From Macrostomum lignano (lineage: Eukaryota): a DNA stretch of 64,000 nt. Shown one piece after another: positions 1,088 through 61,805 of the stretch. The stretch is from the NCBI GenBank assembly GCA_002269645.1, contig NIVC01002311.1, positions 62,001-126,000 on the forward strand. Reading direction: 5' to 3'. The position numbers were made by a program, and so were the translations under genes. The notes under the pieces were generated by a model. That model was not told the origin of the DNA, ran no database searches, and saw only the letters and a list, made by a program, of their open reading frames with translations. Every line of letters starts with the position of its first letter. Within the stretch, counting starts at the first letter, position 1.

Positions 1088-1236
1088 CCCTCGTAAAGAT
1101 AAAGTGTAATTTTACAAAGTCTCGAGCACTTTACTGAGCTCAGTAGCCAACCTGCTATTGACATGTCTGCAAAAACTAACGTAGCTTTTATCGATTCTTA
1201 ACATTAAAGCGATTAAATTGCTGCCTCTTGTTGCAG

Positions 1237-1248
1237 AGCACCCGAACT
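1237..1248 (+). CDS. WSC gene microexon 1 (12 nt, E-H-P-N linker)
   Basis: ttgttgcag|AGCACCCGAACT|gtaagt; phase 1 on both sides. Confidence 0.75.
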
Positions 1249-6771: not shown

Positions 6772-8291
6772 GGCATTGCTTAAGGAGAAAGTTGCTGAGA
6801 TGCCGAGTCAAACCTTTACTTTTCATGTTTTGTTGTCTCCCAACTGGGGCAAACCTTGCTAGTAATATTGAAGAAAAGCAACAGCAACAGCAAGCAACAT
6901 CAATGACAGCAAGAGCCACAGCAACGCCGAAGACCAATCTGATCATCTACGCGGATGACCTCAACCGCGTCCGCCTCGTCCCCAAACAGCATTTCTCTCG
7001 AAGAAAAGCTCAACGACTATACCTAGCCTAACTTTTTTCTGCTCTCGAGTCGCATAAACTACAGATTTCAACCTCGAAATGTACCGCCACCCTATTTAGC
7101 CCGGGAAAGAGCAGGTACTCGCGGCAACTACGTGTCTACATGTACATCAACGGCACACAACTCCTGCCAGCGCTACACTAAAAATTCTGAGTGTCACGTT
7201 CGACCCCAAGCTATCTTTCTTTAGATATGTCTCTAACCTAGCGGAGATAATAAGGAAGAGAGCCAGCATTCTGCACTGACTTGCCGGCTTTTGTTTTAAG
7301 CCACTGTAAAGTATTGCTGTATTCAATTTTAAAGTGACTAAATTGCTGTCTCTTGTTGCAGAGCACCCGAACTGTAAGTTCATCCTCAATCCACCAATAT
7401 ATACGAGTAGCTATAATTTCCTTCGTAGTATTTATAGTGCAAACGCTTTATTTAACCTTCTGAATGTTTGGTAAAGGGGTTGGTGTGGGGACAATGGCCG
7501 AAACGGATCTCACTCTCCCTCCTAAATTGAACCAATGTCTTCTGGCCGGACCCACTTTGAACTCTGAGCAGAAGATCGCGTCATCGTTGGGATCGACCCG
7601 TCCCCAGGCAGACACAATACAGTACGAGTCTCCAGCCCTCTAAGAAATAATGCGGCTCACTCAACATGCTCTTGGATTCCACGAGTCCGGCAGACAAGCG
7701 ACGAACTTGGCTGCACGGAGCGCTGAGTAGTATCGTAGTTGACTGACTCAGCTGAGTGAGCTTTCGATCGTCTGAGTTTATCTGAGTATCTGAGTCTGAG
7801 TAGATATACTCAGATGTACAATCAATACCATCAACCTCAACACGAAAATGATATAAATATTGAGCACTGTTTCATCTTTGGGTACACCGACCCCTTCTAC
7901 AACTGACAAAGTGACTAGCGCCCTTCCACTTTACTTGTTCATGAGATTAAGCATGAGCAGTTCGTTAATTTGTTGTTCGCTTAATGTTTAATTAGTTTGC
8001 ATACAAATTTCAGTTAAACTGCTCGGTTGCTACTTAAATTCCAAAAAGCAGGATAGCCTAAGCCTCTTCATGTCATCCAGCGAGTCAATGACAATCGAGA
8101 GCTGCCGAAAGGACTGCAGTGTCTTTACTGCTCCTTACTTTGGAGTAATAAGTGGAACATATTGCTACTGTGGTGATTCAATAATGGGGACGCAATTGTC
8201 ATTAAGAAAATGTAATTACAGGTGTCCGGGAAATCCAAAGCAGATCTGCGGTGGTTTTGACTCGATGGTAGTGTACGAGCAGCTTTTATGA
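1237..8291 (+). CDS. Tandem WSC-domain (carbohydrate-binding) protein, 3' portion, 5' end probably outside window
   Basis: join(1237..1248,1910..2203,3829..3840,5853..6137,7362..7373,8014..8291); all introns GT-AG and phase 1. Each large exon encodes a full WSC pattern (GCY...MT.E.C..DC...YFGV...CYCG...C.YRCPGN..QICGG...VYEQ). Stop TGA at 8289-8291. Confidence 0.85.
1910..2203 (+). CDS. WSC domain exon 1
   Basis: aaatttcag|TT AAG CTG CAA GGT TGC TAC ... GCC TCT GCT G|gtgaga; 294 nt. Confidence 0.88.
2941..3609. mobile_element. TG...CA element with short imperfect terminal inverted repeats and 4-bp TSD (solo LTR or MITE)
   Basis: Starts TGAGCTTTCACGTGAAT, ends ATTCACACGAAGCTCA; ACAT at 2937-2940 and 3610-3613. 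Confidence 0.5.
3829..3840 (+). CDS. WSC gene microexon 2 (12 nt, E-H-Q-N)
   Basis: tgttgcag|AGCACCAGAACT|gtaagt. Confidence 0.75.
4132..5645 (-). mobile_element. Solo LTR (about 0.88 kb net) carrying a nested hAT MITE
   Basis: TG...CA ends, TSD AGCC (4128-4131, 5646-5649). The paralogous intron in unit 3 shows the empty site CTCCAGCCCTCTAAG. Minus-strand TATAAATA at 4730-4737. Confidence 0.7.
5001..5625. mobile_element. Non-autonomous hAT-type element (MITE) with internal G-run tandem array
   Basis: TIR CAGGGGCGTAGCCAG / CTGGCTACGTCCCTG (1 mismatch); 8-bp TSD TGGTCTAA (4993-5000, 5626-5633); internal array of about 23-bp GnCGCCAGTTTCTT(T)TA units. Confidence 0.85.
5853..6137 (+). CDS. WSC domain exon 2
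   Basis: acctttcag|TT AAA CTG GAA GGC TGC TAC ... TCT GCT G|gtgaga; 285 nt. Confidence 0.88.
6361..6664 (-). mobile_element. tRNA-headed SINE with CORE-like central domain
   Basis: Minus strand: A-box-like TAGCTTAGTAG, B-box GGTTCGATTC (6606-6615), then GTGTCCTTGAGCAAGACACTTAACTC...CAGCTGTAAAATG (6527-6584) resembling the MIR CORE, and an ATT-rich tail near 6361-6375. Confidence 0.75.
6688..6767. repeat. (GA)n microsatellite
   Basis: About 40 GA units. Confidence 0.95.
7362..7373 (+). CDS. WSC gene microexon 3 (12 nt, E-H-P-N)
   Basis: ttgttgcag|AGCACCCGAACT|gtaagt. Confidence 0.75.
8014..8291 (+). CDS. WSC domain exon 3 (terminal coding exon)
   Basis: aaatttcag|TT AAA CTG CTC GGT TGC TAC ... 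VVYEQLL stop. Confidence 0.85.
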
Positions 8292-8376: not shown

Positions 8377-8833
8377 CGCAATCTTTAAACATTGTCCGCA
8401 GTGTCCGTGTTCTCTCAAACAATATATACTTCCTAAGGGCCGCACTGACGCAGAAAGTTTTGCTGTTAAAAGTGCTGCAGCAGAGCCTCATATGTGTAAA
8501 TATGTGGTCACAGCTTCATATTCTAGTGTAGCGCACAGACTTCAGCAGCTGGGTGGAGGAGGGTGTGGTGTTGCAACGGCCTTCGGGCGGTCTGTGAACA
8601 ACCGGAAGAAGCTATGAAGTACTGGGAGTGGTGGAGAGGTCACCCGCCGTGGGGGCCAGGAGGAGGCCCCTAGCCGTGGATGAAAGGTGTTTGGCAACAA
8701 CAACAACTGCAGCAGATGTGACGAAGCGAGTGACGAAAATTGACGAGAGAAAGAGACCGGTGCGATTGACCGCCGACACCGACTCCGAAGACGAGACCGG
8801 CAGCCCGAGTAAAGAGACATCAAGCGAAGAGTT

Positions 8834-9295
8834 GAGAGGCCGGCAGACGGGAGGCCATAAGAGGCCGGCAGACGGGAAGCCATAAGAGGCCGGCAGACGG
8901 GAGGCCATGAGAGGCCAGCAGACGGTAGGCCATGTGAGGCCAGCAGACGGGAGGCCATGAGAGGCCGGCAGACGGTAGGCCATGAGAGGTCGGCAGACGG
9001 TAGGCCATGAGAGGCCAGCAGACGGGAGGCCATGAGAGGCCGGCAGGCGGTAGGCCATGAGAGGCCAGCAGACGGAAGGCCATGAGAGGCCAGCAGACGG
9101 TAGGCCATGTGAGGCCAGCAGACGGGAGGCCATGAGAGGCCGGCAGACGGTAGGCCATGAGAGGTCGGCAGACGGTAGGCCATGAGAGGCCAGCAGACGG
9201 GAGGCCATGAGAGGCCGGCAGACGGTAGGCCATGAGAGGTCGGCAGACGGTAGGCCATGAGAGGCCAGCAGACGGGAGGCCATGAGAGGTCGGCG
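8834..9295. repeat. 25-bp minisatellite (GAGAGGCCAGCAGACGGKAGGCCAT), about 18 copies
   Basis: Direct reading; explains the 25-aa periodic ORFs. Confidence 0.92.
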
Positions 9296-9790: not shown

Positions 9791-10584
9791 TGCCAATCAG
9801 GCTAATAAAAAGCCAATCAAGCTGATAAAAAGCCAATCAAGCTGATAAACTAGCCAATCAAGCTGATAAAAAGCCAATCAAGCTGATAAAAGCCAATCAA
9901 GCTGATAGAAGGTCAATCAAGCTGATAAAAGGCCAATCAAGCTGATAAAAAGCCAATCAAGCTGATAGAAAACCAATCAAGCTGATAAAAGACCAATCAA
10001 GCTGATAAAAAGCCAATCAAGCTGATAAAAAGCCAATCAAGCTGATAGAAGGTCAATCAAGCTGATAGAAGGCCAATCAAGCTGATAAAAGGCCAATCAA
10101 GCTAATAAAAGGCCAATCAAGCTGATAAAAAGCCTATCAAGCTGATAAAAAGCCAATCAAGCTGATAGAAAACCAATCAAGCTGATAAAAGACCAATCAA
10201 GCTGATAAAAAGCCAATCAAGCTGATAAAAAGCCAATCAAGCTGATAAGAAGCCTATCAAGCTGATAAAAAGCCAATCAAGCTGATAGAAGGTCAATCCA
10301 GCGGATAAAAGGCCAATCAAGCTGATAATCAGCCAATCAAGCTAAAAGAAGGTCAATCAAGCTGATAAAAAGCCAATCAAGCTGATAGAAGGTCAATCAA
10401 GCTGATAAAAAGCCAATCAAGCTGATAAAAAGCCAATCAAGCTGATAGAAGGTCAATCAAGCTGATAAAAAGCCAATCAAGCTGATAAAAGCCATTCAAG
10501 CTGATAAAAAGCCAATCAAGCTGATAAAAAGCCAATCAAGCTGATAAAAAGCCAATCAAGCTGATAAAAAGCCATTAAAGCTGA
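9791..10584. repeat. 20-bp minisatellite AGCCAATCAAGCTGATAAAA, about 39 copies
   Basis: Direct reading; variants GGTCAATC and GATAGAA. Confidence 0.95.
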
Positions 10585-11362
10585 TGTCCCTTGGCTCGGG
10601 CTTAGCCGCCTCCCCAGCCGCGAAGGTGGACGCGGTGCCCGCGGCAGGTGAGACACCTGACCGCACTGCACTGCCTTCATCCCCAGCGACTGGGGTACGT
10701 CTGCTGTCTTCTTCTTGTGCGCAACAGTCGGGAGTCTGAACTCGGCCGGCAGCATCCTTCTGGTGGCAATCCCACCAGTTGGGTTGTCAAGCCGTGTCGT
10801 CGTCCAGTTCCTTTGGCTGGCTTTGAGCAGTTTGACGAGCGGCACGAGGCCGCTCGAGGTGAATTCTCAGGAACTGAGCTTCATTGAGGGGGCGCTGAAT
10901 TAGCCCGGACAGCCGACTACTGCGGGTGGGTCTACGTCCGCGCGAGGCAGACTCAGCAGCGCGGATTGCCTTATTAGGCTCTGGGTCGGGTTTCCGCTTG
11001 GCCGGCGGAGCCTGAGCCCCAGCTCCGGGTGCGATACGCTTCCCGTTGTGAAGTGTACGCTGCTTGTCTAAGTGAGTGTGATTGTGTACGTTTAGTAATG
11101 CGTAGCAATGTACATACTATCGGATATATGGGGCGGGGTTTTCGCACTTTACCGTTTATTCGAAACAAATAAACGGTAACTTGGGAGCTAAGACTCCTTG
11201 TAAAGTCCACAACACAACAGTGTCGTCGCAAGCAGAATCAGCATGAGCAAGCAATTAAGGCGAACAAACACTGGGCTCCCCTGCAAAGGCAGTGGCAGGT
11301 CCACCGGCTGGCCAGTCGACCAAGGCAGCAGTCTCTGTTGTTAAGACTCCAGTTAAAACTCC

Positions 11363-11832: not shown

Positions 11833-11941
11833 ATAGCCACGGAGATCATGAAGAGCACACCAAAAGGAGATAGCACGGCCGTTATAAAGGTATCACTACA
11901 GCGCCCAGCATATTTCAAAGATAATCCCACAGGTCGTACAG

Positions 11942-13690
11942 GGAATTAAAGGAGCCGTAGCCTGTATTGATGACATACTCATTGGCGGTCAGACTAAAGA
12001 GCAGTTGAAACAACGGGAAGCGCTGGTGAGAGCGAGACTTCAGCAGCACAATCTCAAAATTAACGAAAAGAAATGCCAAATCTCTCAGCGAAAGGTGCGA
12101 TTCCTAGGCTTCGTACTGGATGACGGTCTGATCCGCCCGGATGCGGAGAAGGTGCTAGGCCTCAGGGAGATGTCCGCTCCAACCGACATAGCTGAGCTGC
12201 AGCCGCTTATCGCTTATCGCTTATCGCCGCTTATCCGCTTATCGCCGCTTATCGAAAATTGAAGGCCATGCTAACGGAATAGTCGGCCCTAGCCAATTTC
12301 GACCCAGCAAAGCACACTATGCTACGAGCTAGAATGTGACGCATCACAGAAAGGTATCGGTGGAGTTTTCATGCAGGAAGATCGTCCAGTCCTATACGTG
12401 AGCAAGCTACTCTCAGAAGCGGAACGCAAATATTCCTAGATCGAGCGAGAGGCACTTGTAATTTTATGGGCAGTGCAAAGGTGTCACAGGTTCTTGGCAG
12501 GGAGGCAATTCACTTTGATAACCGACCATCGTCCACTCACTTACGGCCAGACCAAGAGTTACTGGCACGAGTATCAGCACGGCTGCAGCGCTGGGCCATT
12601 CTCCTGATGACATATGACTTCTATAAGAGATCTGGCCTGATGAATTCCGATGCATTGTCTTGGCTTCTTGGACCCGGACAGGGGCAAACATTCAGCGTTG
12701 GCAGTGTTGAGCTGGCTCCCCCGACTTCAACTATTGAGCAGTACGTTGCGGATTCAGTCGGAGCAATGTCCGGAGTTAAAACGACTCCAAGAAGCGATTC
12801 AAGCTAGTAATTTCAACCACCAGGATCTACGGGCGTACAAGATGGTGTCCACCGAACTCACTATGGAAGACGGTCTGTTGATTAGAGGTTTGAGAGTAGT
12901 TCCACCGCGTGCGTTGAGACAAACCATCATGGAGGAAGCTCATTCGACGCACCTGGGCATGGAAAGGACTAAGCCTTTAATACATGGTGGCCTGCAGCTT
13001 TGGACAGAGTGCAAGATGGTAAAATAAAGCAACAGGAATCACCTCAGTTCCTGGCCACACAGACTACAGAGCCGTGGGATCGTACATGCAGACTTCGCGG
13101 GACCAATCAATGGGCAGTACTTATTTGTGCTGGTAGATTTTTTCTCAAGCGCCACCTAGAGGTCCATCATCTGACTAACGACAAGTGGAATCAGCCACAG
13201 CGGTGTCCTAGTAACGACGAACTTTTCACAGATCTGAATTCCCAGGACTCTGGTGACTGACAATGGACGCAGTTTTGTATCTGCCGAGACAACCAAAATT
13301 GGCTGAAGAGTTTAATATGGTTGCCAGCATGTACAACACCGCCATACAACCCTCAAAGCAACGAGCTCGCATAAAGGTTCGTCCGAAGAGGCCACTGGAC
13401 TGAGTCAACAAAATTTGGATCGGTTTCTGCTGTTCTACCGGGCCACACGTGGGTCTTCGGTGACGACATGGCGGGCAACACCGCAGATCTGGCCAAGATT
13501 GTTTTTCTGACCGGAAGAAACACCTCGCTGGTCATGTTAACCAATGGACAGTACAAAGGCCCTTTTAGCGGAATGGGCGTCTGCGCCTTCCCGCTGTGTA
13601 CCCCTCCGGGGCAGCCCTGCAGTACAAAGGTCCACCTTGATCAGTTGCACGGCCCAGGGGAAGATGCGGCTGTCGGAGACGGAATTTAAG
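11942..13690 (+). pseudogene. Gypsy pol remnant (RT C-half, RNase H, integrase) with stops and frameshifts; protease and RT N-half deleted
   Basis: ACIDDILIGG (YxDD equivalent), KKCQISQRKVRFLGF, LECDASQKGIGGV, ITDHRPL, HADFAGP...LVDFFS, LVTDNGRSF, FLLFYRAT, KVHLDQL. Confidence 0.85.
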
Positions 13691-14216
13691 CAGAATCTTC
13701 CGCAGTGCAAGAACCTCCAGCAAATCCTCCTGAAACTATATTGACAGCCCGACCGAGTTGCCCGGCACGGAGCAGAGCACGCAAGAGCAGCCCGCACCAT
13801 TGCCTGCAACTGTATCACCATAACAAAGTACTCGGCTCGCTCAGAAGCCGTGAGTAAACTATCGGTTTTGTCTCCGAAGGACAGTTTTATCAAAGAGGGG
13901 AGGTGTTGTGGGTCGATTTATTCTATATTTATATGATATTTTCTTGAATCAGTCACAGCAGAATTTGGTCTATGGCCTAGTGGGAACTTCGTTTTGTACT
14001 GTATAATGGTACGAGTACCGCCTAAAAAGAATGGCTTACGCAGTATGTCGAAAAGACAAAATTAGCTGGCTGGTAAAGCCAAGAAATAAACAAAACTGTT
14101 AAGTTGCGAGCAAAGACTCCTTGTAAAGACCACAACACAACAGTTTCCATTAAGCGCTGTTAAAAGAAATGCGCCAAATGAATTCCATGACATTGGGACG
14201 CGGAATGTATTATCGA

Positions 14217-14594: not shown

Positions 14595-16135
14595 ATCAGG
14601 ACGACTAAAAAGTAGCATACATGTAGTAGTGGCCTTGTATCGGATCCTTAGCGATCGAAATTAAGAAGAGTTCTCTGGCTAATTCTCGCTAATTCAGTCT
14701 CGTATTGTGACCTAATAGACCTAATAGACCTAAGAGTTGTGGCACGACCCACAAAAGTAGTAATATTATATATTCTAAAGAATCTATTACATATTACTAA
14801 ATTCTCTGTAGCGGCTCACAAGCAATCCTGTCTGCTTGGCATCATCTTTAATCTTTCAGTCACGACCACAGCTATCCATCGAAATCCTATTGCACTTCTA
14901 AATTTGTTTGAATTGATTTTGACTGCCGGAAATTCAGCACCGATTTGAACGCTGCAAAAGATCCATGGTCGAGCCTCGATTCATTTCAATTCCACTTTAT
15001 ACATTCCAAATCCGCCGTTCTCACTCCTAAAGCTGACGACTAGCCGTGATCTACGTTTAGCCTGTAGGTTGTATACTAATAGCACTTTGCCTGCAGTTTT
15101 TAAAAAATCCTATACCCACTGGCCACTGCTGACACCAAAAGTTGTAACAGGTCCATACTCAGGAACTTCAGTCAGGAAGGTGGGATCGGGGTGTATGCAA
15201 TTTTTTGGGGTATCCAGCGACCAGCCCAGCTCAAGGTATGGAGGGTGGAAAGTGGAAACTTTCTTTTTTTGTAAAATTATTGTTAGAAAATATTTGTTAA
15301 AATAATAATAGGCATCAATTTTTTTGTGCACGAAATTATGTAGTTACTTACTTTACTTAAGGGTAAGAGGTATTAATTATTAAGTTAAGTAGGCCTAATC
15401 AATTTAAATGACCTTTAGTAGGCCTAATGGCTAATTCTTATGTAAGTTAAATGACTTTTTAGGGAAAATTTTGGAGTGCATATACAATTCTGTCTTTGTA
15501 GGCCTATTTTTTGAAATGCAAATTGCTAGGCCTAGGCAGCCATAGTTCCAAACACCCTGAATGTATGCCAGACTAAAATCTCTCACAATATTTTTGGTAC
15601 ACCAGTGACAGTGTACACCAAATTTTACAACAATGAATTATTTTGTTTTTAAATTGCATAAAATAACATTTTTTTGCTGATAATTTGGTTAATACTTTTG
15701 CTTTTTTGCTGATATTATTTATAGTGGAAACCTAATACATGCAAAGATTTGTTTAAATTTTTTATTACGAGCTTTAAAAACCTGGAAACTTGAAATTGCT
15801 TAAAAATAAAATCATAGTTTTTTATTTTTTTTAATACTTTTCACGAACTCTTCCGTGTGATTCTATTAGCTGCATGCACACTATTTTCTTAGACTATTTG
15901 ATTTGATTCCGCAACTGCAGGAACATGTACACTACTTTTTGAATGTGCATTTTTATATGCCAGATAGTATGCCAGATTTCAAAAAGTAAAAAATTGTATA
16001 CCAAGTGTATACCAAAAGTCGTGAGTGTACGCCGGATCAATCCCTGTACCCCATGTACCCCAGATCAATCCCAATTAATATGCCAGATTAATCCGGCGTA
16101 CCACCCCTCTTCCGGACTATGGCTAGGCAGCTAGG

Positions 16136-18786
16136 TGAAGTGAAGCGAAAGCGCCGTTAGCAAGAGGATGGGAGAAATCAGCCGACACGCGCGTGATGCG
16201 TGAACAAGCATCCAGCCTTGGCAGCAACTCCCCAGATGCACAAGATCTGCATGCCTAAAAATAGTCCTGATGATCGGCGAGCAAGAAGCCCAGCCATGCG
16301 ACCCTCGCGTGATGCATGCACAACCTCTGACCGACACTGCCTATTGGGCCTCGAAATCCCACTCTCTCTCCCTACTGCTCCTATTCCTCGTTGCTCGCGT
16401 ACAGTGTGCTAGCTTATAAAATATACTGATTGAAGAGGAAAGATCCTTGCCTGAAGTTTGAGAATGTGACTCTAGAGATCACACAGAGAAAGTTACCATC
16501 GAGGTCCATTGTTCGTTGTCTTCCTGAACTGTTGGCAGAAGGAAACGAATAATATGGGAAAACCCATATAAATTGTCATTTCAATTGGTTCCACTGACTG
16601 CGTGAGTCGCCGCTAGACAGAAGTCTCAGACACCATGCAGTTACTGCTCTGCTGCATGTCTTCAACAGCCATCCGAATGAATCGAGAACTGAGACTTTCC
16701 TGCCTTCAGTAAAGGAAAACTTCGAACTAAACAAGACCAATGGACGAAGATCAAGAAGCGACGCAGTTTAACCTTCCAAGAAGAAACTTTCGTTGAGAGA
16801 TCTACACAATCAATTTGGTCAAGACGGTATTTTTCCGACGTCCTTTTTAACTGCAATGTACCTTCAGCCAGCATCCTGATCTGACTGTCTACCAGACGCT
16901 GTTTCAATTTGTCGAGTCTCCGTGTCCAGTCCTATTTGCGTCACTGTTTAGGGCATCGAAAAGCCCATTCAATTTGTCGAGTTTCCGAGTTCACGTGAAT
17001 CCCCCTCTCAGATCTGATTAAATAGTCAAGAGGATATGCTGGTACAATTCATCCACTGTTGTCACAAGTTCACTTTGCCCCTTGACCAAGTTTCGTGTTT
17101 CAACAACATCAACTCAATTGCAAGTTACCAAGTGGGACTGCGTATCGCAAGCAAATGCACAACTGTACGCCATGTCATCATTGCTCCAAGCTTATTTTCA
17201 ACAGAGCTCGGAGGGCCTCGCTTCCCTGAAAAAAGAGCGACTGAAGTGAAGCGAAAGCGCCGTTAGCAAGAGGATGGGAGAAATCAGCCGACACGCGCGT
17301 GATGCGTGAACAAGCATCCAACCTTGGCAGCAACTCCCCAGATGCACAAGATCTACATGCCTAAAAATAGTCCTGATGATCGGCGAGCGAAAAGCCCAGC
17401 CATGCGACCCTCGCGTGATGCATGCACAACCTCTGACCGACGGCTCCTATTGGGCCTCCCTGTTCCACTTTCTTCCCCTATTCCTCCTTGCTCGCGTACA
17501 GTCTGTTAACTTATAAAATATACTGATTGAAGAGGAAAGATCCTCGCCTGAAGTTTGAGAATGTGACTCTAGAGATCACACAGAGAAAGTTACCATCGAG
17601 GTCCATTGTTTGTTGTCTTCCTGAACTGTTGGCAGAAGGAAACGATAATATGGGAAAAAGCCATATAATTTTCGTTTCAATTGGTTCCACTGACCGCGTG
17701 AGTCACCGCTAGACGGAAGTCTCAGACACCATGCAGTTATCGCTCTGCTGCATGTCTTCCACAGCCATCCGAGTAAATCGAGAACTGAGACTTTCCTGCC
17801 TTCAGTAAAGGAAAACTTCGAACTAGATAAGACCAATGGACGAAGATCAAGAAGCGACGCAGTTTACCCTTCCAAGAAGAAACTCTCGTTGAGAGATCTA
17901 CACAATCAATTTGGTCAAGACGGTATTTTTCCAACGTCCTATTTAACTGCAATGTACCTTCAGCCAGCATCCTGATCTGACTGTCTACCAGACGCTGTTT
18001 CAATTTGTTGAGTCTCCGTGTCTAGTCCTATTTGCGTCACTGTTTAGGGCATCGAAAAGCCCATTCAATTTGTCGAGTTTCCAAGTTCACGTCAATCCCC
18101 CTCTCAGATCTGATTAAATAGTCAAGAGGATATGCTGGTACAATTCATCCACTGTTGTCACAAGTTCACTTTGCCCCTTGACCAAGTTTCGTGTTTCAAC
18201 AACATCAACTCAACTGCAAGTTACCAAGTGGGACTGCGTATCGCAAGCAAATGCACAACTGTACGCCATGTCATCATTGCTCCAAGCTTATTTTCAACAG
18301 AGCTCGGAGGGCCTCGCTTCCCTGAAAAAAGAGCGACTGAAGTGAAGCGAAAGCGCCGTTAGCAAGAGGATGGGAGAAATCAGCCGACACGCGCGTGATG
18401 CGTGAACAAGCATCCAGCCTTGGCAGCAACTCCCCAGATGCACAAGATCTGCATGCCTAAAAATAGTCCTGATGATCGGCGAGCAAGAAGCCCAGCCATG
18501 CGACCCTCGCGTGATGCATGCACAACCTCTGACCGACACTGCCTATTGGGCCTCGAAATCCCACTCTCTCTCCCTACTGCTCCTATTCCTCGTTGCTCGC
18601 GTATAGTGTGCTAGCTTATAAAATATACTGATTGAAGAGGAAAGATCCTCGCCTGAAGTTTGAGAATGTGACTCTAGAGATCACACAGAGAAAGTTACCA
18701 TCGAGGTCCATTGTTCGTTGTCTTCCTGAACTGTTGGCAGAAGGAAACGATTAATATGGGAAAAACCCATATAAATTGTCATTTCA
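16136..18786 (+). mobile_element. Tandem non-autonomous LTR retroelement (TRIM-like), LTR-I-LTR-I-LTR
   Basis: LTRs 16136-16583, 17242-17679, 18338-18786; outer LTRs TGAAGTGA...TCATTTCA, middle ends CGTTTCA. Internal segments 16584-17241 and 17680-18337 (658 bp each). PBS TGGTTCCACTGAC follows LTR1 and LTR2; purine tract GAAAAAAGAGCGA precedes LTR2 and LTR3. Single TSD TAGG (16132-16135, 18787-18790). No intact ORF. Confidence 0.85.
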
Positions 18787-19984
18787 TAGGCCTAGGGGTT
18801 AATAAGGCCTATAAAAACATTTTGAAAAAAGATAAAGTGAGAAGACAAGCTATTAGAGGCCTAGGCCTATTAGTAATTATATTTATATCATACATGCGCA
18901 ACCCCCTGATTTACACTGGCCATGCGACTTACTTTTTGACCAAAAATGCGACTTACCTGTGACAGAAACCCTATAGCAACATTAACGCAATTTTGGGTAA
19001 ACGGCAGGAGTAACTATGACTGTCTTATAAGGGCTAAATGCCTTGTCATCTAATTAGTACTATGTCTGTATTCTTTGGGGTGAGCATTTTTGCGACTTAC
19101 CCCTGGTCCACCACAATTTACGGTGGCCAGATCGGCCAGGTCGGCCAGCAGTTGCGCATGTATGTTTATATATTATATTATACTTTATACCAAGCACTAG
19201 GCCTCTATCCTATCAAATAGTATAGGCCTATAAAAAATATGGTATATAGGCAGGGGCCTATGAATGATAGATAGGTTTAACTTTGGTTTCCCATGTCTTA
19301 AAATTATTTTTCTGGAGTGTTTAAAACATTAATTGTTAAAAACAAAACTTCAAAAAAGTTAAAAGCAACAAGTAAAAAGTCAATAGCATAGTCCTAGTTT
19401 ACTTTGTTATATTATTTCGTAATTCTACTTTACTTCGTTATATTAATTTCATGTATTTTCTTGCATCTGTACTCTTACCACAACACTTTCAGCTATTATG
19501 GCCAGTTGCCCAGCTGCACCAAGCTTTTAAACTATACTAAAAGAAACTTCAAAATTCGCAAGATAGTGGAAGCCAGTCGGGATGACTTCACCACCATGAA
19601 GTGGCTTATAATTGCGAAGCAGAAAAATGGGGTAAAATAATTTAACAAAGGGCAAAATAATATAATGAAGTAAACTAGAACTCTGCCAAGTCAACAAGTC
19701 ACATTCACATAGGGCCATACCTACTCTTAAAGATTATACAATATGTAAAAAACAGTGATCCCTTGACATTGTAACTTAAAGTTTGTATTAGAAAAACAAA
19801 TTTATTCATAATATATATTTTATATATACTGTATATTATCATAAAAGTATTGCAACAATATAGGACCTTTTTTGCATTGCAACAATAAAAGACCCTGTTT
19901 TGCAGTATGATATTTTGGTCTTTTGTATGCCAACTGCCAACAGCTACACCATATGCCTATATATCAGCTCTGTGGTACAATTAG

Positions 19985-22189: not shown

Positions 22190-22450
22190 ATGAGTGAGAA
22201 CAGTGAAAATGAAGAGGACCAATTCTTTGATTGTCCTGAGGATCCTGAAGCCATCCAGTTTGCCAGTCTTGACAGAATCTATGCTATCTGTCTGCCAGCC
22301 ACTCCATCTGCTGGTGCTGCATCGAATGCTGTTGCCACACCGTGTGTTGCTGCTTCTGGCTCTGAAGCTTGGCGCGAACGTCTGCTGCTATTTCCAAGCA
22401 GTGGAGAGGCTCTGGCCAAGCTTAAAGAGCATAGGAATGCCCGCTATAAG
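22190..22450 (+). CDS. ANKLE2: ANKLE2 coding exon 1
   Basis: GAAGCCATG start; donor AAG|gtaagt; 261 nt. Confidence 0.8.
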
Positions 22451-25400
22451 GTAAGTTATTTTTATTTGGAAGTTTCGGGTGTACTTTTAAAGAGTTATAT
22501 ATTGTAGTCTGGCAGTGGCTCACTGAATGGCTGAGGTGACGGTGGCAGTGGCTCACTGAATGGCTGAGGGGAGGGTGGCAGTGGCTCACTGAATGGCTGA
22601 GGGGAGGGTGGCAGTGGCTCACTGAATGGCTGAGGTGACGGTGGCAGTGGCTCACTGAATGGCTGAGGGGAGGGTGGCAGTGGCTCACTGAATGGCTGAG
22701 GTGACGGTGGCAGTGGCTCACTGAATGGCTGAGGGGAGGGTGGCAGTGGCTCACTGAATGGCTGAGGTGACGGTGGCAGTGGCTCACTGAATGGCTGAGG
22801 GGAGGGTGGTAGTGGCTCACTGAATGGCTGAGGGGAGGGTGGTAGTGGCTCACTGAATGGCTGAGGTGAGGGTGGTAGTGGCTCACTGAATGGCTGAGGG
22901 GAGGGTGGCAGTGGCTCACTGAATGGCTGAGGTGACGGTGGCAGTGGCTCACTGAATGGCTGAGGGGAGGGTGGCAGTGGCTCACTGAATGGCTGAGGTG
23001 ACGGTGGCAGTGGCTCACTGAATGGCTGAGGGGAGGGTGGTAGTGGCTCACTGAATGGCTGAGGGGAGGGTGGTAGTGGCTCACTGAATGGCTGAGGTGA
23101 GGGTGGTAGTGGCTCACTGAATGGCTGAGGGGAGGGTGGTAGTGGCTCACTGAATGGCTGAGGTGACGGTGGTAGTGGCTCACTGAATGGCTGAGGTGAG
23201 GGTGGTAGTGGCTCACTGAATGGCTGAGGCCTGAGGGGAGGGTGGCAGTGGCTCACTGAATGGCTGAGGGGAGGGTGGTAGTGGCTTACTGAATGGCTGA
23301 GGTGAGGGTGGTAGTGGCTCACTGAATGGCTGAGGTGAGGGTGGCAGTGGCTCACTGAATGGCTGAGGGGAGGGTGGCAGTGGCTCACTAAATGGCTGAG
23401 GTGACGGTGGCAGTGGCTCACTGAATGGCTGAGGGGAGGGTGGTAGTGGCTCACTGAATGGCTGAGGTGAGGGTGGCAGTGGCTCACTGAATGGCTGAGG
23501 GGAGGGTGGCAGTGGCTCACTGAATGGCTGAGGTGAGGGTGGCAGTGGCTCACTGAATGGCTGAGGTGACGGTGGCAGTGGCTCACTGAATGGCTGAGGT
23601 GACGGTGGCAATGGCTCACTGAATGGCTGAGGGGAGGGTGGTAGTGGCTCACTGAATGGCTGAGGGGAGGGTGGCAGTGGCTCACTGAATGGCTGAGGTG
23701 ACGGTGGCAGTGGCTCACTGAATGGCTGAGGGGAGGGTGGTAGTGGCTCACTGAATGGCTGAGGTGAGGGTGGCAGTGGCTCACTGAATGGCTGAGGTGA
23801 GGGTGGCAGTGGCTCACTGAATGGCTGAGGGGAGGGTGGTAGTGGCTCACTGAATGGCTGAGGTGAGGGTGGTAGTGGCTCACTGAATGGCTGAGGGGAG
23901 AGGGTGGCAGTGGCTCACTGAATGGCTGAGGAGAGGGTGGTAGTGGCTCACTGAATGGCTGAGGTGAGGGTGGCAGTGGCTCACTGAATGGCTGAGGGGA
24001 GGGTGGTAGTGGCTTACTGAATGGCTGAGGTGAGGGTGGTAGTGGCTCACTGAATGGCTGAGGGGAGGGTGGCAGTGGCTCACTGAATGGCTGAGGGGAG
24101 GGTGGTAGTGGCTCACTGAATGGCTGAGGTGAGGGTGGTAGTGGCTCACTGAATGGCTGAGGTGAGGGTGGTAGTGGCTCACTGAATGGCTGAGGGGAGA
24201 GGGTGGTAGTGGCTCACTGAATGGCTGAGGTGAGGGTGGTAGTGGCTCACTGAATGGCTGAGGGGAGGGTGGCAGTGGCTCACTGAATGGCTGAGGGGAG
24301 GGTGGCAGTGGCTCACTGAATGGCTGAGGTGAGGGTGGTAGTGGCTCACTGAATGGCTGAGGTGAGGGTGGTAGTGGCTCACTGAATGGCTGAGGGGAGA
24401 GGGTGGTAGTGGCTTACTGAATGGCTGAGGTGAGGGTGGTAGTGGCTCACTGAATGGCTGAGGGGAGAGGGTGGTAGTGGCTCACTGAATGGCTGAGGTG
24501 AGGGTGGTAGTGGCTCACTGAATGGCTGAGGGGAGGGTGGCAGTGGCTCACTGAATGGCTGAGGTGAGGGTGGTAGTGGCTCACTGAATGGCTGAGGGGA
24601 GGGTGGCAGTGGCTCACTAAATGGCTGAGGTGAGGGTGGTAGTGGCTCACTGAATGGCTGAGGGGAGAGGGTGGTAGTGGCTCACTGAATGGCTGAGGGG
24701 AGAGGGTGGTAGTGGCTCACTGAATGGCTGAAACAAGGGTATCAGATCGATAAGCAGCAAATAACTATCCTGAAAACGGCAACCACGACAAATTTATCCA
24801 GGTGTTCAATTCTTATCCGGAGGCCAAGCAGTTCGCCAGCAGTACAGTTGAACAGCTGACACCGAAGCGACCAGCGAAGGCTGGCGGTGCCCAGCAACCG
24901 GGAGGTTCAACTGACCGTTTGGCCACGGCTGTCCAAGATACGGACAGCTTCAAAAGTGTCACCCAAGTGCAGCTCAATCAGTTGAAGGCCGCAATCATCT
25001 CTGGCGATTTGAGTACAGTCTCAGCTCTGGTCTGGAATAATCCTAAGCATTTGGTGACAGATTGCGATGCGCCCACTCTGCTAATGCCTCGGTTTAGGTA
25101 CAACTGCTTGCACCAGGTGAGCATCCGGTTTTATTGATTTTTTCACTCATCATCATTATTATTGTAGCTAATATTCTATTGAGCTACTTACTAAATAGTA
25201 GTATGTGCACATTTACATGTGTTTTTCAGCTTTTTACTGTTGGTTATTACACCAGCGTAAATGTCGATAAGCTACTTATAACTCAGTAGTATTGACCGTA
25301 TTTTTAGTTAGTTTCTCTGTCGCTGTCCTCGGTAACGATGCTAATAAGCTATTAACAACATATATTTTTTGGTTAGTTTTTGTGCCACTGTCCTTATAAA

Positions 25401-27531
25401 AAGATACTAATAAGCTACTTAAAAATCAGTAGTATGACCATAATTATGGTTACTTTTTGTGCCGCTGTCCTAAAACGCTAATAAGCTACTTACAAGTCAG
25501 TAGTATGACCGCAACTGTCACGTGATTTTTACATTTCATATGCGCAACCAATCAAATTCTACGATGATTTTACAGGCCGCATTGCGCAATCAATCTGCCG
25601 TCATCAAACTTCTGCTGGCCATCTTATCCGGTGACGAGTTCTGGCGTCGACTTAACGCAGACACTGGCGCAGAATTGCGACGCTGTAGACGCAATCGGTT
25701 ATTAGATCTCTATTTAAACGGCCGAGAGATGGCGCTGGGCGAAACTCCGCTACACATTGCGGCTAAATTTTGTTACACCGAATGCATTCGCTTATTGGTT
25801 GCTAGGCGAGAATGCGATATTAATATTCTTAACAATGCCGGTCAAACTGCCCTAGAGATTGTTGGCTCGCGCTGCGATTCCGCGTCAGCTGGCCAGCTGG
25901 CCGAGACGCGTCTGGCTCTGTCCGGCCAATTTGTACCTCTATTGGCCGAAGTATCAACCGGTGTTGTCCGGGTCGGCCAGCCAGTTCCAGCTTGGGCCCT
26001 GCAGGAGATGCTAGACCAGCCTCACAGGCTGCTGGTCCGCGCCTACGCTGGCCCGGCCGAGCCGGACACGGCGCGCAGCCTCTACGAACGCTGGCGAGCG
26101 CCGTCGCGTGTACTGTTATTCTGTCGCCGAACAGCTGCGGCTACCACCGCCGACAAAGACAACTGGCCTACTACTGGCAACAAAGACTTTGAGGACAGCG
26201 ACGATTATGAGTCTTCTCGACCGCCTCGCCTGCCGCCGGCATCTCCTGTCCCGGGTCGGCCGGCCGGTTTCGAATTCCAATCGCCTACTAACATGCTTCG
26301 GACGCCGCCAATGGTAGGCAAGGTGGACGCCAACGACGACAACGTTGACGACGCAGCCGCTGCAGCCGTAGCCGAGGTGACGGCCGCACCGCTGTTAGAC
26401 TACGACAAAGGCTACGAGATCACCGGCAGGGCTCTCTGCCGGGCATTGGGCGGCATTGCTTGGCACGAGCGTTGGGATTTTTTTGACGGCGATTTCGCCG
26501 ATTTAGCTACGGACGAGGGGCTCAGCCGGTTGAATCGGCTGCTAACTGACGCCTACGAACGAATGGAAAAAGAATTGGGCGTCTCAGCGTCTGCCAATAC
26601 TAGCGGCGAAGATGCTGTCGGAGCCGCCGCTGTCGCTGCCGCCGCCGCCGCCGCCGCAGATCCCTGGACTGATTATCGCGACTTTGGAGGCGGCAGTCCA
26701 ATCGAGGACGACGACGCCGACGAAACAAAGGAACTAACGGATTTATCCCGCGATAGTTGTCACGGCAGCGACAATGGCCAGCAGGCATCCGCTGACCTGT
26801 CAGATTCATTCCTGGAGCGGGTGTCTCGCTGGGGTCTGTCCGAATCTAAGAAAGCCGCCGCTGCCGCTCAGCTACCGGCGTCGTTGACGAAAGCATCGAC
26901 CAGCGGGAAATCTGGCGCCGATCCGCGATTTCGCTCTCCGCCACCGCCGCCGCCGCCGACTTCGCGTTTGTCGAAGCAGCCGCAGGCGCCGCGAATGAGC
27001 ACCCCTAGGCAGCAGCAACAGCGTCGTGCAGCGCCAACTTCCAGTCCGTTTGAATTCGTGGTTAATAATGGCGCCAACGCCAGGCCTGGGGGCCTGAGTT
27101 TCTCTTCACCTAGTAGCCGAACTAATAATGCTACTCATAGTAAGCGGCCAGTGACTCCGGTCGACCTGCAGGTACTCAAAGCGATCTCTCCGGCTTCGTC
27201 TGCTTCTAAAATTGATCAAAAGCGCTATCCAAGTTTGGCGCGTTGGCGCCGATCGATTGGCGCCAATACAGCTGCTAGCGTCTCTAGCGAGGACGTATCT
27301 AAACTGTTATTACAGCTTCCCGCTTCGCCGTCGCCTTCGCCTTCGTTAGCGGCCGCGTCTCCGTTGGCGTCGCCGTTGCCAACGTCGCCGTCGTTGCGTC
27401 GGCTGGCCGCGGCGGCAGCGGCCGGTGGCACCCCGCGGCGCCGGCTAGCGGCGAGGAGCGGCGCTACGGGTCAGACGCCTGACGCTCTTAATAAATCGTT
27501 CGATCACGATTCTGTTGCGTTCGGCCAATAA
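22190..27531 (+). CDS. ANKLE2: ANKLE2/LEM4-like protein (ankyrin repeats, viroplasmin-like domain), 843 aa
   Basis: join(22190..22450,24802..25116,25576..27531), phase-0 GT-AG introns. Motifs resemble human ANKLE2 as recalled: [15 protein letters not shown]|[24 protein letters not shown]...[28 protein letters not shown]...WHERWDFF...[20 protein letters not shown]...YPSLARWR. Confidence 0.88.
22511..24731. repeat. 33-bp minisatellite filling ANKLE2 intron 1 (GGYAGTGGCTCACTGAATGGCTGAGGKGAGGGT), about 67 copies
   Basis: Direct reading; source of the [11 protein letters not shown] and SHSVSHYHP ORFs. Confidence 0.95.
24802..25116 (+). CDS. ANKLE2: ANKLE2 coding exon 2
   Basis: tatccag|GTG TTC AAT ... 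CAC CAG|gtgagc; 315 nt. Confidence 0.88.
25576..27531 (+). CDS. ANKLE2: ANKLE2 coding exon 3
   Basis: ttttacag|GCC GCA TTG; open to TAA at 27529-27531. Confidence 0.9.
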   Translation, partial: AALRNQSAVIKLLLAILSGDEFWRRLNADTGAELRRCRRNRLLDLYLNGREMALGETPLHIAAKFCYTECIRLLVARRECDINILNNAGQTALEIVGSRCDSASAGQLAETRLALSGQFVPLLAEVSTGVVRVGQPVPAWALQEMLDQPHRLLVRAYAGPAEPDTARSLYERWRAPSRVLLFCRRTAAATTADKDNWPTTGNKDFEDSDDYESSRPPRLPPASPVPGRPAGFEFQSPTNMLRTPPMVGKVDANDDNVDDAAAAAVAEVTAAPLLDYDKGYEITGRALCRALGGIAWHERWDFFDGDFADLATDEGLSRLNRLLTDAYERMEKELGVSASANTSGEDAVGAAAVAAAAAAAADPWTDYRDFGGGSPIEDDDADETKELTDLSRDSCHGSDNGQQASADLSDSFLERVSRWGLSESKKAAAAAQLPASLTKASTSGKSGADPRFRSPPPPPPPTSRLSKQPQAPRMSTPRQQQQRRAAPTSSPFEFVVNNGANARPGGLSFSSPSSRTNNATHSKRPVTPVDLQVLKAISPASSASKIDQKRYPSLARWRRSIGANTAASVSSEDVSKLLLQLPASPSPSPSLAAASPLASPLPTSPSLRRLAAAAAAGGTPRRRLAARSGATGQTPDALNKSFDHDSVAFGQ

Positions 27532-30989: not shown

Positions 30990-31665
30990 GGACTTAGGGA
31001 CGCTGAAGTCGCAAATGAGACAGTGACTGACTTCTGGAGCAAAGTCGCCACTGCTGGCAACCGCCCTCTACTGATGCGCATAGCACGAGTGTTATCTGTC
31101 TTGCCTCATGGCAATGCTGAAGTTGAGCGTATTTTTAGTAACTTAAACGATGTTGTGACGAAAAAACGCTCCAGCCTGGGGCCGCAGACCATCAAGGCAC
31201 TCGTTGTTTCGCGGTCCTGCCTACAGACAAAGCATTGGTCAGCTGCTACACTGCCAGTCTCCTTGAGGCTGAAGAATTTGTGCGCCAGTGCTGCTGCTGC
31301 ATATCGGCGACGACTGGAAGAGAAGGCTGCGGACGAACAGCGGAAGCGAGAGGAGCTCGAGAAGCGAGTTTTGATGGAGCTGCAAAGTGAGAAGAGTGCC
31401 AGCAAGGTGTATGGTGGCTTGGAAAAGTCTATCAATGCGACGGCAGATGCGATCAAGCAGAAGCAGAAACAGCGAGATAATGCTCAGCGGCTGTTGTCGG
31501 AGTCTTCAAAGGTCAAGGAAGCAAGGGACCAGGAGCTCGAAGAACTACGGCAGCAACAAGAGAAGCTGCAACGAAAGAAGATGAAGGAGTCTGAGAAACT
31601 GGCGCAAAGCATTCTCAAGCGACGGGCTGTTGAGCAGTCGGTGTCAACTCCTCTGCCTGCAGGTA
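30990..31665 (+). pseudogene. hAT transposase C-terminal remnant (dimerisation domain plus coiled coil)
   Basis: DFWSKV...LLMRIARVLSVLPHGNAEVERIFS...KKRSSLGPQTIKAL matches the hAT dimerisation pattern; interrupted by mariner at 31666. Confidence 0.8.

Positions 31666-37573: not shown

Positions 37574-61805
<24,232 letters not shown>

What the first reader, a model, noticed from the sequence alone, without database searches (positions are those of the whole stretch)
16136..18786. Tandem TRIM-like retroelement: LTR-internal-LTR-internal-LTR inserted as one unit
Seen: three 438-449-bp LTRs with TG...CA ends and a TATA box (16415-16421), two 658-bp non-coding internal segments, a PBS after LTR1 and LTR2, a purine tract before LTR2 and LTR3, and one TAGG TSD around the whole. 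Established: TRIMs are small non-autonomous LTR retrotransposons; tandem-array forms are best known in plants, and few animal TRIMs are described (e.g. in taeniid tapeworms). The PBS TGGTTCC fits a tRNA ending GGAACCA, typical of tRNA-Glu (inference). This is the best candidate here for an undescribed mobile system: a miniature parasite of a Gypsy-type helper (4-bp TSD) that propagates as multimers.
Basis: partly seen in the sequence, partly recalled or inferred. Interest (0 to 1): 0.75.

Follow-up and report, generated by a model that had tools for sequence, protein, structure and literature searches.

The report
Two-unit non-coding LTR retrotransposon, inserted once

Summary
The described structure is there, at the stated coordinates: LTR1 (448 bp), internal (658), LTR2 (438), internal (658), LTR3 (449). 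It has TG...CA ends, a TATA box, a TGG-type primer-binding site after LTR1 and LTR2, a purine tract before LTR2 and LTR3, and one TAGG target-site duplication around the whole. It has no coding capacity and no ribozyme, 5S or tRNA-like motif.

New here: the outer LTRs are 99.3% identical. The middle LTR differs from both by 4.6% plus 6-7 indel events, and the internals differ by 2.9%. Together with the single TSD, this rejects later unequal crossing-over, recombination between neighbouring insertions, and a haplotype or assembly duplication. The dimer existed before integration. I favour template switching between two co-packaged related RNAs during reverse transcription. Read-through of an older genomic dimer is the main rival.

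This exact signature was described in plants in 2007. L3I2 tandem TRIMs with TSDs are common in plants and reported in bivalves and tapeworms. No other copy, helper element, host tRNA or host species could be found, so the Gypsy-helper, tRNA-Glu and "propagates as multimers" claims are untested. The monomer (about 1,550 bp) slightly exceeds strict TRIM size limits.

The parts
16132..16135 (+). 5' target-site duplication TAGG
   Evidence: Identical 4-mer at 18787-18790; not extendable to 5 bp
16136..16583 (+). LTR1 (448 bp), TG...CA
   Evidence: 445/448 identical to LTR3 with one 1-nt indel; boundaries fixed where similarity to the other LTRs stops
16415..16421 (+). TATA box TATAAAA in U3 (LTR position 280); same motif in LTR2 (17512) and LTR3 (18617)
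   Evidence: Role as the Pol II promoter is an inference
16541..16583 (+). Terminal LTR hairpin (putative U5 structure); equivalents at 17638-17679 and 18743-18786
   Evidence: MFE -10.6, -13.0 and -14.0 kcal/mol; z = -3.1, -5.2 and -4.1 against shuffles. Kept in LTR2 despite 6 differences, with a re-registered outer stem
16586..16598 (+). Primer-binding-site-like TGGTTCCACTGAC, 2 nt after LTR1
   Evidence: Identical copy at 17682-17694. The first unit-to-unit difference falls at the next base. The matching tRNA was not identified
16584..17241 (+). Internal segment 1 (658 bp), non-coding
   Evidence: 639/658 identical to internal 2 with no indels; no ORF >88 aa; no Pfam or Rfam match
17228..17241 (+). 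Polypurine-tract-like GAAAAAAGAGCGAC before LTR2
   Evidence: 12/14 purines; identical copy at 18324-18337
17242..17679 (+). LTR2 (438 bp), shared middle LTR, divergent variant
   Evidence: 34 of 38 variable LTR columns are LTR2-specific, including a 9-bp deletion. 95.4% identity to LTR1 and LTR3 plus 6-7 indel events
17682..17694 (+). Second PBS-like site, 2 nt after LTR2
17680..18337 (+). Internal segment 2 (658 bp), non-coding
18324..18337 (+). Polypurine-tract-like sequence before LTR3
18338..18786 (+). LTR3 (449 bp), TG...CA
18787..18790 (+). 3' target-site duplication TAGG

Best explanation
This is a non-coding, non-autonomous LTR retrotransposon (TRIM-like, monomer about 1.55 kb) present as a heterodimer of form L3I2. 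The dimer was made before integration and was inserted once by an integrase that makes a 4-bp staggered cut.

Inferred life cycle: transcription starts downstream of the TATA box in U3. The RNA (R-U5-PBS-internal-PPT-U3-R) is packaged in trans by proteins of an unidentified autonomous LTR element. A tRNA primes at the TGG... site 2 nt after the LTR.

Favoured origin of the dimer: two related but different family RNAs, A and B, were co-packaged. Minus-strand DNA started on A and jumped at R to the 3' end of B. It copied B to its intact 5' end, then jumped at R again to the 3' end of A. Plus-strand transfer then produced the order [U3 of B, R, U5 of A] - A internal - [U3 of A, R, U5 of B] - B internal - [U3 of B, R, U5 of A]. 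This makes the outer LTRs identical at birth, the middle LTR different, and the two internals different, all bounded by one TSD.

Shown: the structure, the absence of coding capacity, the single TSD, and the divergence pattern. Inferred: the promoter, the tRNA priming, the helper, and template switching as opposed to read-through.
For: - Canonical LTR-element anatomy at base resolution.
- No coding capacity and no known RNA motif.
- One 4-bp TSD around the whole, with no host DNA between units.
- Divergence: LTR1 vs LTR3 3/448 substitutions; internal 1 vs internal 2 19/658 (Fisher p = 0.008); LTR1 vs LTR2 20/436 (p = 0.0002; with indels p = 1e-5). 34 of 38 variable LTR columns are LTR2-specific.
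- All four published diagnostic features of a complex formed during reverse transcription are met: internal LTR, two complete cores, flanking TSD, similar outer LTRs (PMC1950507).
- For switching between two distinct lineages rather than in-place decay of an old dimer: the unit-to-unit differences are strongly non-uniform, 18/414 in the 5' internal part against 1/323 across the 3' internal part plus the first 79 nt of U3 (p = 0.0003). LTR2 also keeps the terminal hairpin through a re-registered perfect 7-bp stem, which suggests its U5 evolved under functional constraint.
- Youth: CpG o/e is 0.80-0.84 in the element and 0.45-0.47 in the flanks.
Against: - Only one locus could be examined. No monomer, solo LTR, other dimer, source copy or helper was found in any searchable collection.
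- Template switching and read-through of an older dimer predict the same structure at this locus.
- The uneven spread of differences could reflect uneven constraint or gene conversion rather than mosaic ancestry.
- The hairpin argument rests on three sequences.
- The PBS has no identified tRNA partner.
- The purine tract is separated from the LTR by CGAC.
- No canonical poly(A) signal was found, so the R/U5 limits are guesses.
Confidence: 0.55

Rival explanations
1. Read-through copy of an older genomic dimer. A dimer already existed elsewhere, however it formed. A transcript started in its first LTR, ignored the weak termination signals of the middle LTR, and ended in the third LTR. This roughly 2.2-kb RNA was reverse-transcribed and integrated normally. 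That regenerates identical outer LTRs while copying the middle LTR as it was.
For: It predicts the same pattern: one TSD, near-identical outer LTRs and a divergent middle LTR. No LTR has a canonical AATAAA or ATTAAA after the TATA box. LTR2 has lost the only A-rich hexamer near the LTR end (TATAAA at position 432 of LTR1 and LTR3), so it could be a poorer terminator.
Against: The source dimer would need to stay transcriptionally active while its units diverged by 3-4.6%, or to have been a heterodimer already. Neutral divergence in place should be roughly uniform, but it is not (p = 0.0003). LTR2's U5 hairpin is preserved rather than decayed. No second dimer could be looked for.
Confidence: 0.27
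2. Post-integration recombination. Either a monomer inserted and was later duplicated by unequal sister-chromatid or allelic crossing-over between its two LTRs, or two neighbouring independent insertions recombined and lost the DNA between them. These are the usual explanations given for tandem TRIMs.
For: It is the mechanism most often proposed for tandem TRIMs. Unequal crossing-over within one element would keep the TSD.
Against: Unequal exchange within one element predicts a middle LTR that is a hybrid of the two near-identical outer LTRs, and internals no more diverged than the LTRs. Observed: internals four times more diverged than the outer LTRs (p = 0.008), and a middle LTR with 34 private differences spread over U3 and U5. 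Recombination between two independent insertions predicts different flanking 4-mers (1/256 chance of a match) and outer LTRs as different as the two elements; neither is seen.
Confidence: 0.08
3. Assembly artefact. A monomer locus was falsely expanded, for example by placing two haplotypes in tandem or by a loop in the assembly graph through copies from other loci.
For: Repeats of about 1.1 kb are error-prone in assemblies, and no reads were available to check.
Against: The units are not identical (2.9-4.6% divergence plus indels). Two haplotypes of one insertion cannot be more diverged than that insertion's own two LTRs (0.7%). The path returns to a flank with a matching TSD.
Confidence: 0.04
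4. Not a retroelement: a 1.1-kb macro-tandem repeat of 2.4 units that happens to resemble one.
For: Formally the array is 2.4 copies of a unit of about 1,100 bp, and the window is full of tandem arrays.
Against: The following all fall at exactly the right places: TG...CA ends with 7/8 terminal inverted repeat, a TGG site 2 nt after the repeat, a purine tract before it, a TATA box inside it, and a 4-bp TSD. The outer partial units are more alike than adjacent units are. The other arrays in the window have periods of 4-197 bp.
Confidence: 0.03

Closest known systems
Template-switching complexes of LTR retrotransposons (Angela, Squiq, Opie; Sabot & Schulman 2007, PMC1950507)
   Same: The diagnostic set is identical: a third, internal LTR shared by two complete cores, one flanking TSD, and highly similar outermost LTRs. 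The origin proposed there (inter-RNA strand transfer at R in one reverse-transcription cycle) fits this element.
   Different: Those are 10-17 kb autonomous Copia or Gypsy elements of grasses with 5-bp TSDs. This is a 2.65-kb non-coding dimer with a 4-bp TSD, in a genome with animal-type genes.
Tandemly arrayed TRIMs (TA-TRIM, L3I2) of plants, e.g. Zma-SMART (Gao et al. 2016, PMC4717578)
   Same: Non-coding LTR elements arranged LTR-I-LTR-I-LTR and bounded by one TSD. L3I2 is the commonest array form, 63 of 93 arrays in maize.
   Different: Plant TRIMs are much smaller (most <1 kb, LTRs about 100-250 bp). That paper does not analyse outer versus middle LTR divergence. No sequence relationship was tested.
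ta-TRIM of taeniid tapeworms (Koziol et al. 2015, PMC4558846)
   Same: An animal non-coding LTR element with a similar internal length (about 590 vs 658 bp). It has TG...CA LTRs, mostly 4-bp TSDs, a PBS a few bases after the LTR, a PPT a few bases before the 3' LTR, no canonical AATAAA, and occasional tandem copies.
   Different: ta-TRIM LTRs are about 198 bp (here 448). Its PBS matches tRNA-Leu at 4 nt from the LTR (here a different TGGTTCC... site at 2 nt). Its tandems have highly similar units and are attributed to unequal crossing-over. Its helper candidate (lennie) is known; none is known here.
biv-TRIM of bivalves (Satovic et al. 2019, PMC6934838)
   Same: An animal TRIM with tandem arrays of the TDRx_I(x-1) pattern and solo repeats.
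   Different: biv-TRIM lacks a recognisable PBS and forms very long arrays (up to 58 repeats). Here there is a clear PBS-like site and a two-unit insertion with a TSD.
Cassandra TRIMs and retrozymes
   Same: Small non-autonomous LTR elements that often occur as multimers.
   Different: Their defining features, a 5S rRNA-like sequence in the LTR (Cassandra) and hammerhead ribozymes in the LTR (retrozymes), are absent here (Rfam).

Membership tests
LTR retrotransposon (structural definition) | Direct long terminal repeats ending TG...CA with short terminal inverted repeats | tested here: met
   Three LTRs of 438-449 bp, all TG...CA; 7/8 terminal inverted repeat in LTR1 and LTR3
LTR retrotransposon (structural definition) | Target-site duplication of 4-6 bp flanking the element | tested here: met
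   TAGG at 16132-16135 and 18787-18790
LTR retrotransposon (structural definition) | PBS complementary to the 3' end of a host tRNA next to the 5' LTR | tested here: inconclusive
   TGG-initiated 13-nt site 2 nt after LTR1 and LTR2, invariant between units. No tRNA in the window and no host genome to match against
LTR retrotransposon (structural definition) | Polypurine tract next to the 3' LTR | tested here: met
   GAAAAAAGAG followed by CGAC before LTR2 and LTR3; 12/14 purines. The 4-nt spacer makes it imperfect, comparable to the 3-nt spacer of ta-TRIM
TRIM (criteria of Gao et al. 2016, PMC4717578) | Element shorter than 1,500 bp (classically <1,000 bp, LTRs about 100-250 bp) | tested here: not met
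   Monomer 1,544-1,554 bp with 438-449-bp LTRs; criteria quoted. It misses by about 50 bp. It would still count as a TRIM under broader size definitions (own knowledge, not checked)
TRIM (criteria of Gao et al. 2016, PMC4717578) | No retrotransposon proteins | tested here: met
TRIM (criteria of Gao et al. 2016, PMC4717578) | [quoted passage not shown] | not testable with these tools
   No other copy in the window. No eukaryotic genome collection was searchable. Exact-match scans were empty or gave chance hits
Tandemly arrayed TRIM, L3I2 | [quoted passage not shown] | tested here: met
Template-switching complex (Sabot & Schulman 2007) | Internal LTR, two complete cores, flanking TSD, and outermost LTRs highly similar to each other | tested here: met
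   Outer LTRs 99.3% identical against 95.4% to the middle LTR; p = 0.0002; criteria
Template-switching complex (Sabot & Schulman 2007) | Origin from two separately transcribed, co-packaged parent RNAs | not testable with these tools
   Needs the parent monomer copies in the host genome. Indirect support only
Retrozyme | Hammerhead ribozyme in each LTR | tested here: not met
   No Rfam match at gathering threshold or at E<=5
Cassandra | 5S rRNA-like Pol III unit in the LTR | tested here: not met
Parasite of a Ty3/Gypsy helper | An autonomous element sharing LTR termini, PBS, PPT and TSD length | tested here: inconclusive
   The only Gypsy-type sequence in the window (pol relic about 11.9-13.6 kb, RT_RNaseH E = 5e-23) shares no LTR, PBS or other nucleotide similarity with the element. 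A genome-wide search was not possible

The most novel reading that the evidence does not exclude
In this unidentified animal-type genome, a TRIM-like family uses the dimer as a regular replicating unit. Weak or structurally masked 3'-end signals in the LTR let transcripts run through a middle LTR, so multimers are copied repeatedly and compete with monomers for the helper's capsids. That would be a non-coding retroelement whose unit of selection is a concatemer.
Probability: 0.12. Interest if true: 0.55.

Novelty: new member of a known kind. Interest (0 to 1): 0.3.

Why it matters
Tandem TRIMs in animals have so far been put down to unequal crossing-over after insertion. This locus is a clean case where that explanation fails and the dimer must have existed before integration. 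That extends a mechanism documented for large autonomous plant elements to a small non-coding element in a genome with animal-type genes.

In practice, LTR-identity dating and TE annotation pipelines should treat L3I2 structures as possible single insertions. The outer-LTR-versus-middle-LTR test used here is simple and general. Beyond that, the element is an ordinary young non-autonomous LTR retrotransposon about 3.4 kb upstream of an ANKLE2-like gene, in the same orientation. Any regulatory effect on that gene is speculation.

Tried and rejected
1. Other copies in the window: none.
2. Other copies through spurious ORFs. Five ORFs from the LTR and internal region were concatenated and searched against 5.8 billion proteins; nothing was found.
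3. Exact-match DNA scans with the LTR-end/PBS junction, the PPT/LTR junction, the LTR 5' end and the R region. Metagenomes gave 0 and 0. Viral contigs gave 0 and 0. Prokaryotic genomes gave three hits that are 20-25-nt chance matches, with about 1 expected.
4. Host identification.
 - The ACLY exon gave at best 72-77% identity, with arthropods the best named hits.
 - Exact look-up of the 669-aa ANKLE2-like ORF was not on record.
 - The contigs of the closest NCBI relatives showed only assembly accessions.
 - The Gypsy pol relic gave only 27-34% identity.
 - The host remains 'animal-type gene content, species unknown'.
5. Retrozyme, Cassandra or small-RNA-derived LTR: rejected.
6. Hidden gag or pol remnant in the internal region: rejected.
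7. The neighbouring Gypsy relic as helper: no shared sequence, PBS or LTR ends.
8. Global RNA structure of the R-U5-leader region: not different from shuffles, z = -0.47. Only the terminal LTR hairpin stands out.
9. Literature search for the PBS string: only unrelated PCR primers. A search for tRNA-Glu-primed LTR elements gave nothing useful.
10. Pfam confirmation of the putative upstream ANKLE2-like exons: no hit.
Full report
OBSERVATION. Repeat finding and pairwise alignment give LTR1 16136-16583 (448 bp), internal 1 16584-17241 (658 bp), LTR2 17242-17679 (438 bp), internal 2 17680-18337 (658 bp) and LTR3 18338-18786 (449 bp). Similarity between LTRs stops exactly at TG on the left and CA on the right. 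The first 8 nt and the reverse complement of the last 8 nt match at 7/8 in LTR1 and LTR3. TAGG flanks the whole structure on both sides and cannot be extended to 5 bp. TATAAAA lies at 16415-16421, LTR position 280. TGGTTCCACTGAC lies 2 nt after LTR1 and LTR2 and nowhere else in the window with 1 mismatch or fewer. GAAAAAAGAG followed by CGAC directly precedes LTR2 and LTR3. No other copy of the LTR or the internal segment exists in the 64 kb.

NON-CODING, NO KNOWN RNA MODULE. The longest ORF on either strand is 88 aa. A six-frame Pfam scan of a full monomer finds nothing. A concatenate of the five longest ORFs finds no protein among 5.8 billion. Rfam finds nothing at gathering thresholds in the whole window and only noise at E<=5 in the element. 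There is therefore no hammerhead ribozyme (retrozyme), no 5S unit (Cassandra) and no tRNA-like part. The R-U5-leader region as a whole folds no better than shuffled sequence (z = -0.47). The last ~44 nt of every LTR does form a stable hairpin (z = -3.1, -5.2 and -4.1).

THE KEY PATTERN.
- LTR1 and LTR3 differ by 3 substitutions and one 1-nt indel in a homopolymer (99.3% identity).
- LTR2 differs from each of them by 20 substitutions and 6-7 indel events, including a 9-bp deletion (95.4%).
- The two internals differ by 19 substitutions and no indels (97.1%).
- In a three-way alignment, 34 of 38 variable columns are private to LTR2.
- The outer-LTR divergence is significantly lower than the internal divergence (Fisher p = 0.008) and lower than the LTR1-LTR2 divergence (p = 0.0002; p = 1e-5 if indel events are counted).

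WHAT THIS EXCLUDES.
- Unequal crossing-over within a single inserted monomer. It predicts a middle LTR that is a hybrid of two near-identical LTRs, and internals no more diverged than the LTRs. Both predictions fail.
- Recombination between two neighbouring independent insertions. It predicts different flanking 4-mers and outer LTRs as different as the two elements. Both fail.
- A haplotype or assembly duplication of a monomer. It predicts units no more diverged than that insertion's own LTRs. This fails, and the copies are clearly distinct sequences.
- A generic macro-tandem repeat. It does not explain TG...CA ends, PBS, PPT, TATA and TSD all in register.

What remains is that the dimer existed before integration. 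One reverse-transcription and integration event regenerated identical outer LTRs and copied the middle LTR as internal sequence.

MECHANISM. Sabot & Schulman (PMC1950507) defined exactly this signature for plant Angela, Squiq and Opie complexes: internal LTR, two complete cores, flanking TSDs, similar outermost LTRs. They explained it by strand transfer at R between two different co-packaged RNAs. Worked through for this element, that model gives outer LTRs made of U3 from B and U5 from A, and a middle LTR made of U3 from A and U5 from B. Internal 1 comes from A and internal 2 from B.

The alternative is read-through transcription of an older genomic dimer. It gives the same local picture. I prefer template switching (0.55 against 0.27) for two reasons.
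- The unit-to-unit differences are very unevenly spread: 18/414 in the 5' internal part against 1/323 across the 3' internal part plus the first 79 nt of U3 (p = 0.0003). That is expected for two family members with mosaic histories or differential constraint, and not for neutral decay of two units sitting side by side.
- LTR2 keeps the terminal hairpin despite six differences there. Its two substitutions near the end re-register the outer stem into a perfect GAAACGA/UCGUUUC helix. This suggests its U5 evolved in a replicating lineage.

In favour of read-through, no LTR has AATAAA or ATTAAA after the TATA box, and LTR2 has lost the only A-rich hexamer near the LTR end. The available data cannot settle this.

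AGE AND CONTEXT. Three substitutions in 448 bp between the outer LTRs, and a CpG o/e of 0.80-0.84 against 0.45-0.47 in the flanks, indicate a fairly recent insertion into CpG-depleted, AT-rich intergenic DNA. The window carries animal-type genes.
- A fused ATP-citrate lyase with exons at 43.7-56.6 kb on the + strand. One exon matches human ACLY residues 200-400.
- An ANKLE2-like terminal exon at 25522-27531.

The element lies about 3.4 kb upstream of what looks like that gene's first exon (about 22190), in the same orientation. This is an inference and was not confirmed by Pfam. The best ACLY matches are only 72-77% identical, with arthropods the best named hits, so the host species and phylum remain unknown.

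HELPER AND tRNA. A degraded Ty3/Gypsy pol (RT C-terminus, RNase H, integrase remnants; RT_RNaseH E = 5e-23) lies at about 11.9-13.6 kb, bracketed by a 65-nt direct repeat. It shares no nucleotide similarity, PBS or LTR ends with the element. Its closest relatives are only 27-34% identical K02A2.6-like polyproteins. It is therefore no evidence for a helper. By general knowledge, a 4-bp TSD occurs in several LTR-element superfamilies and does not identify a Gypsy helper. In ta-TRIM it was one of several shared features with the candidate helper, not the only one. The PBS begins TGGTTCC, which by my own recollection resembles the complement of animal tRNA-Glu 3' ends. This is a lead, not a test: there is no tRNA in the window and no host tRNA set.

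COMPARISON WITH WHAT IS KNOWN. L3I2 tandem TRIMs bounded by one TSD occur in 129 plant TRIM subfamilies and are the commonest array form in maize. Tandem TRIMs are reported in bivalves and taeniid tapeworms, where they are attributed to unequal crossing-over. ta-TRIM is the closest animal analogue in layout: an internal region of about 590 bp, 4-bp TSDs, PBS and PPT a few bases from the LTRs, and no canonical poly(A) signal. It has 198-bp LTRs and a tRNA-Leu PBS. Under the Gao et al. criteria, this element passes 'no proteins', narrowly fails '<1,500 bp' (1,544-1,554 bp), and cannot be tested for 'two or more copies with different TSDs'. I therefore call it TRIM-like.

VERDICT. The element is a new member of a known kind. 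The one point of modest interest is a clean pre-integration dimer signature in a small non-coding element outside plants. Interest 0.3.

Noticed in passing
window 11900-13600 (+), direct repeats 11162-11224 and 14083-14147: Degraded Ty3/Gypsy-type pol with many stops and frameshifts: RT C-terminus, RNase H (E = 5e-23) and integrase zinc-finger and core remnants. It is bracketed by a 65-nt direct repeat (83%) that may be LTR remnants. Closest proteins are only 27-34% identical (K02A2.6-like). It is unrelated in sequence to the finding.
   Followed up: yes
whole window, e.g. 5046-5560, 8833-9294, 9792-10585, 22510-24731, 38048-38798, 40308-40816, 49520-50589, 50993-52171, 56593-57743, 58332-59241, 59661-61603, 63072-63774: Very high density of minisatellites: more than 25 arrays with periods of 4-197 bp and up to about 67 copies. 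Many lie inside introns of the ATP-citrate lyase gene. Several produce long spurious ORFs, such as the 350-aa repeat ORF at 58194-59246.
   Followed up: partly
window 1102-2218, 3685-4131, 5651-6152, 7329-8283: Four diverged direct copies (71-80% identity) of a unit of about 1 kb. One ORF (5930-6283) carries a WSC domain (E = 8e-13). These are probably tandemly duplicated WSC-domain exons or genes.
   Followed up: partly
window 31023-31805 (+): Remnant of a hAT transposase C-terminal dimerisation domain (E = 2e-7), i.e. an old DNA transposon.
   Followed up: no
window 25522-27531 (+), with possible upstream exons near 22190-22507 and 24700-25100: ANKLE2-like gene: ankyrin repeat plus a sub-threshold ANKLE2 third domain, and a long low-complexity alanine/proline-rich tail. 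A 2.2-kb 33/66-bp minisatellite (22510-24731) would lie in its first intron. The upstream exons are inferred from the translation only.
   Followed up: partly
window 43745-44419, 52719-53951, 55924-56559 (+): Exons of a fused, animal-type ATP-citrate lyase. Best database matches are only 72-77% identical, so the source organism has no close relative in the protein collection searched.
   Followed up: partly
window 16903-16928 / 16968-16993 and 17999-18024 / 18064-18089: A 26-nt direct repeat (TTCAATTTGTCGAG...) at 65-nt spacing inside each internal segment of the element. Its function is unknown; a protein-binding or packaging site is conceivable.
   Followed up: no
window 15136-16135 and 18787-19786 versus 16136-17241: CpG observed/expected is 0.45-0.47 in the flanks and 0.80-0.84 in the element. 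This suggests a CpG-depleted (probably methylated) host genome and a young insert. The short motif GGCCTAGG / CTAGG recurs around the insertion site.
   Followed up: partly
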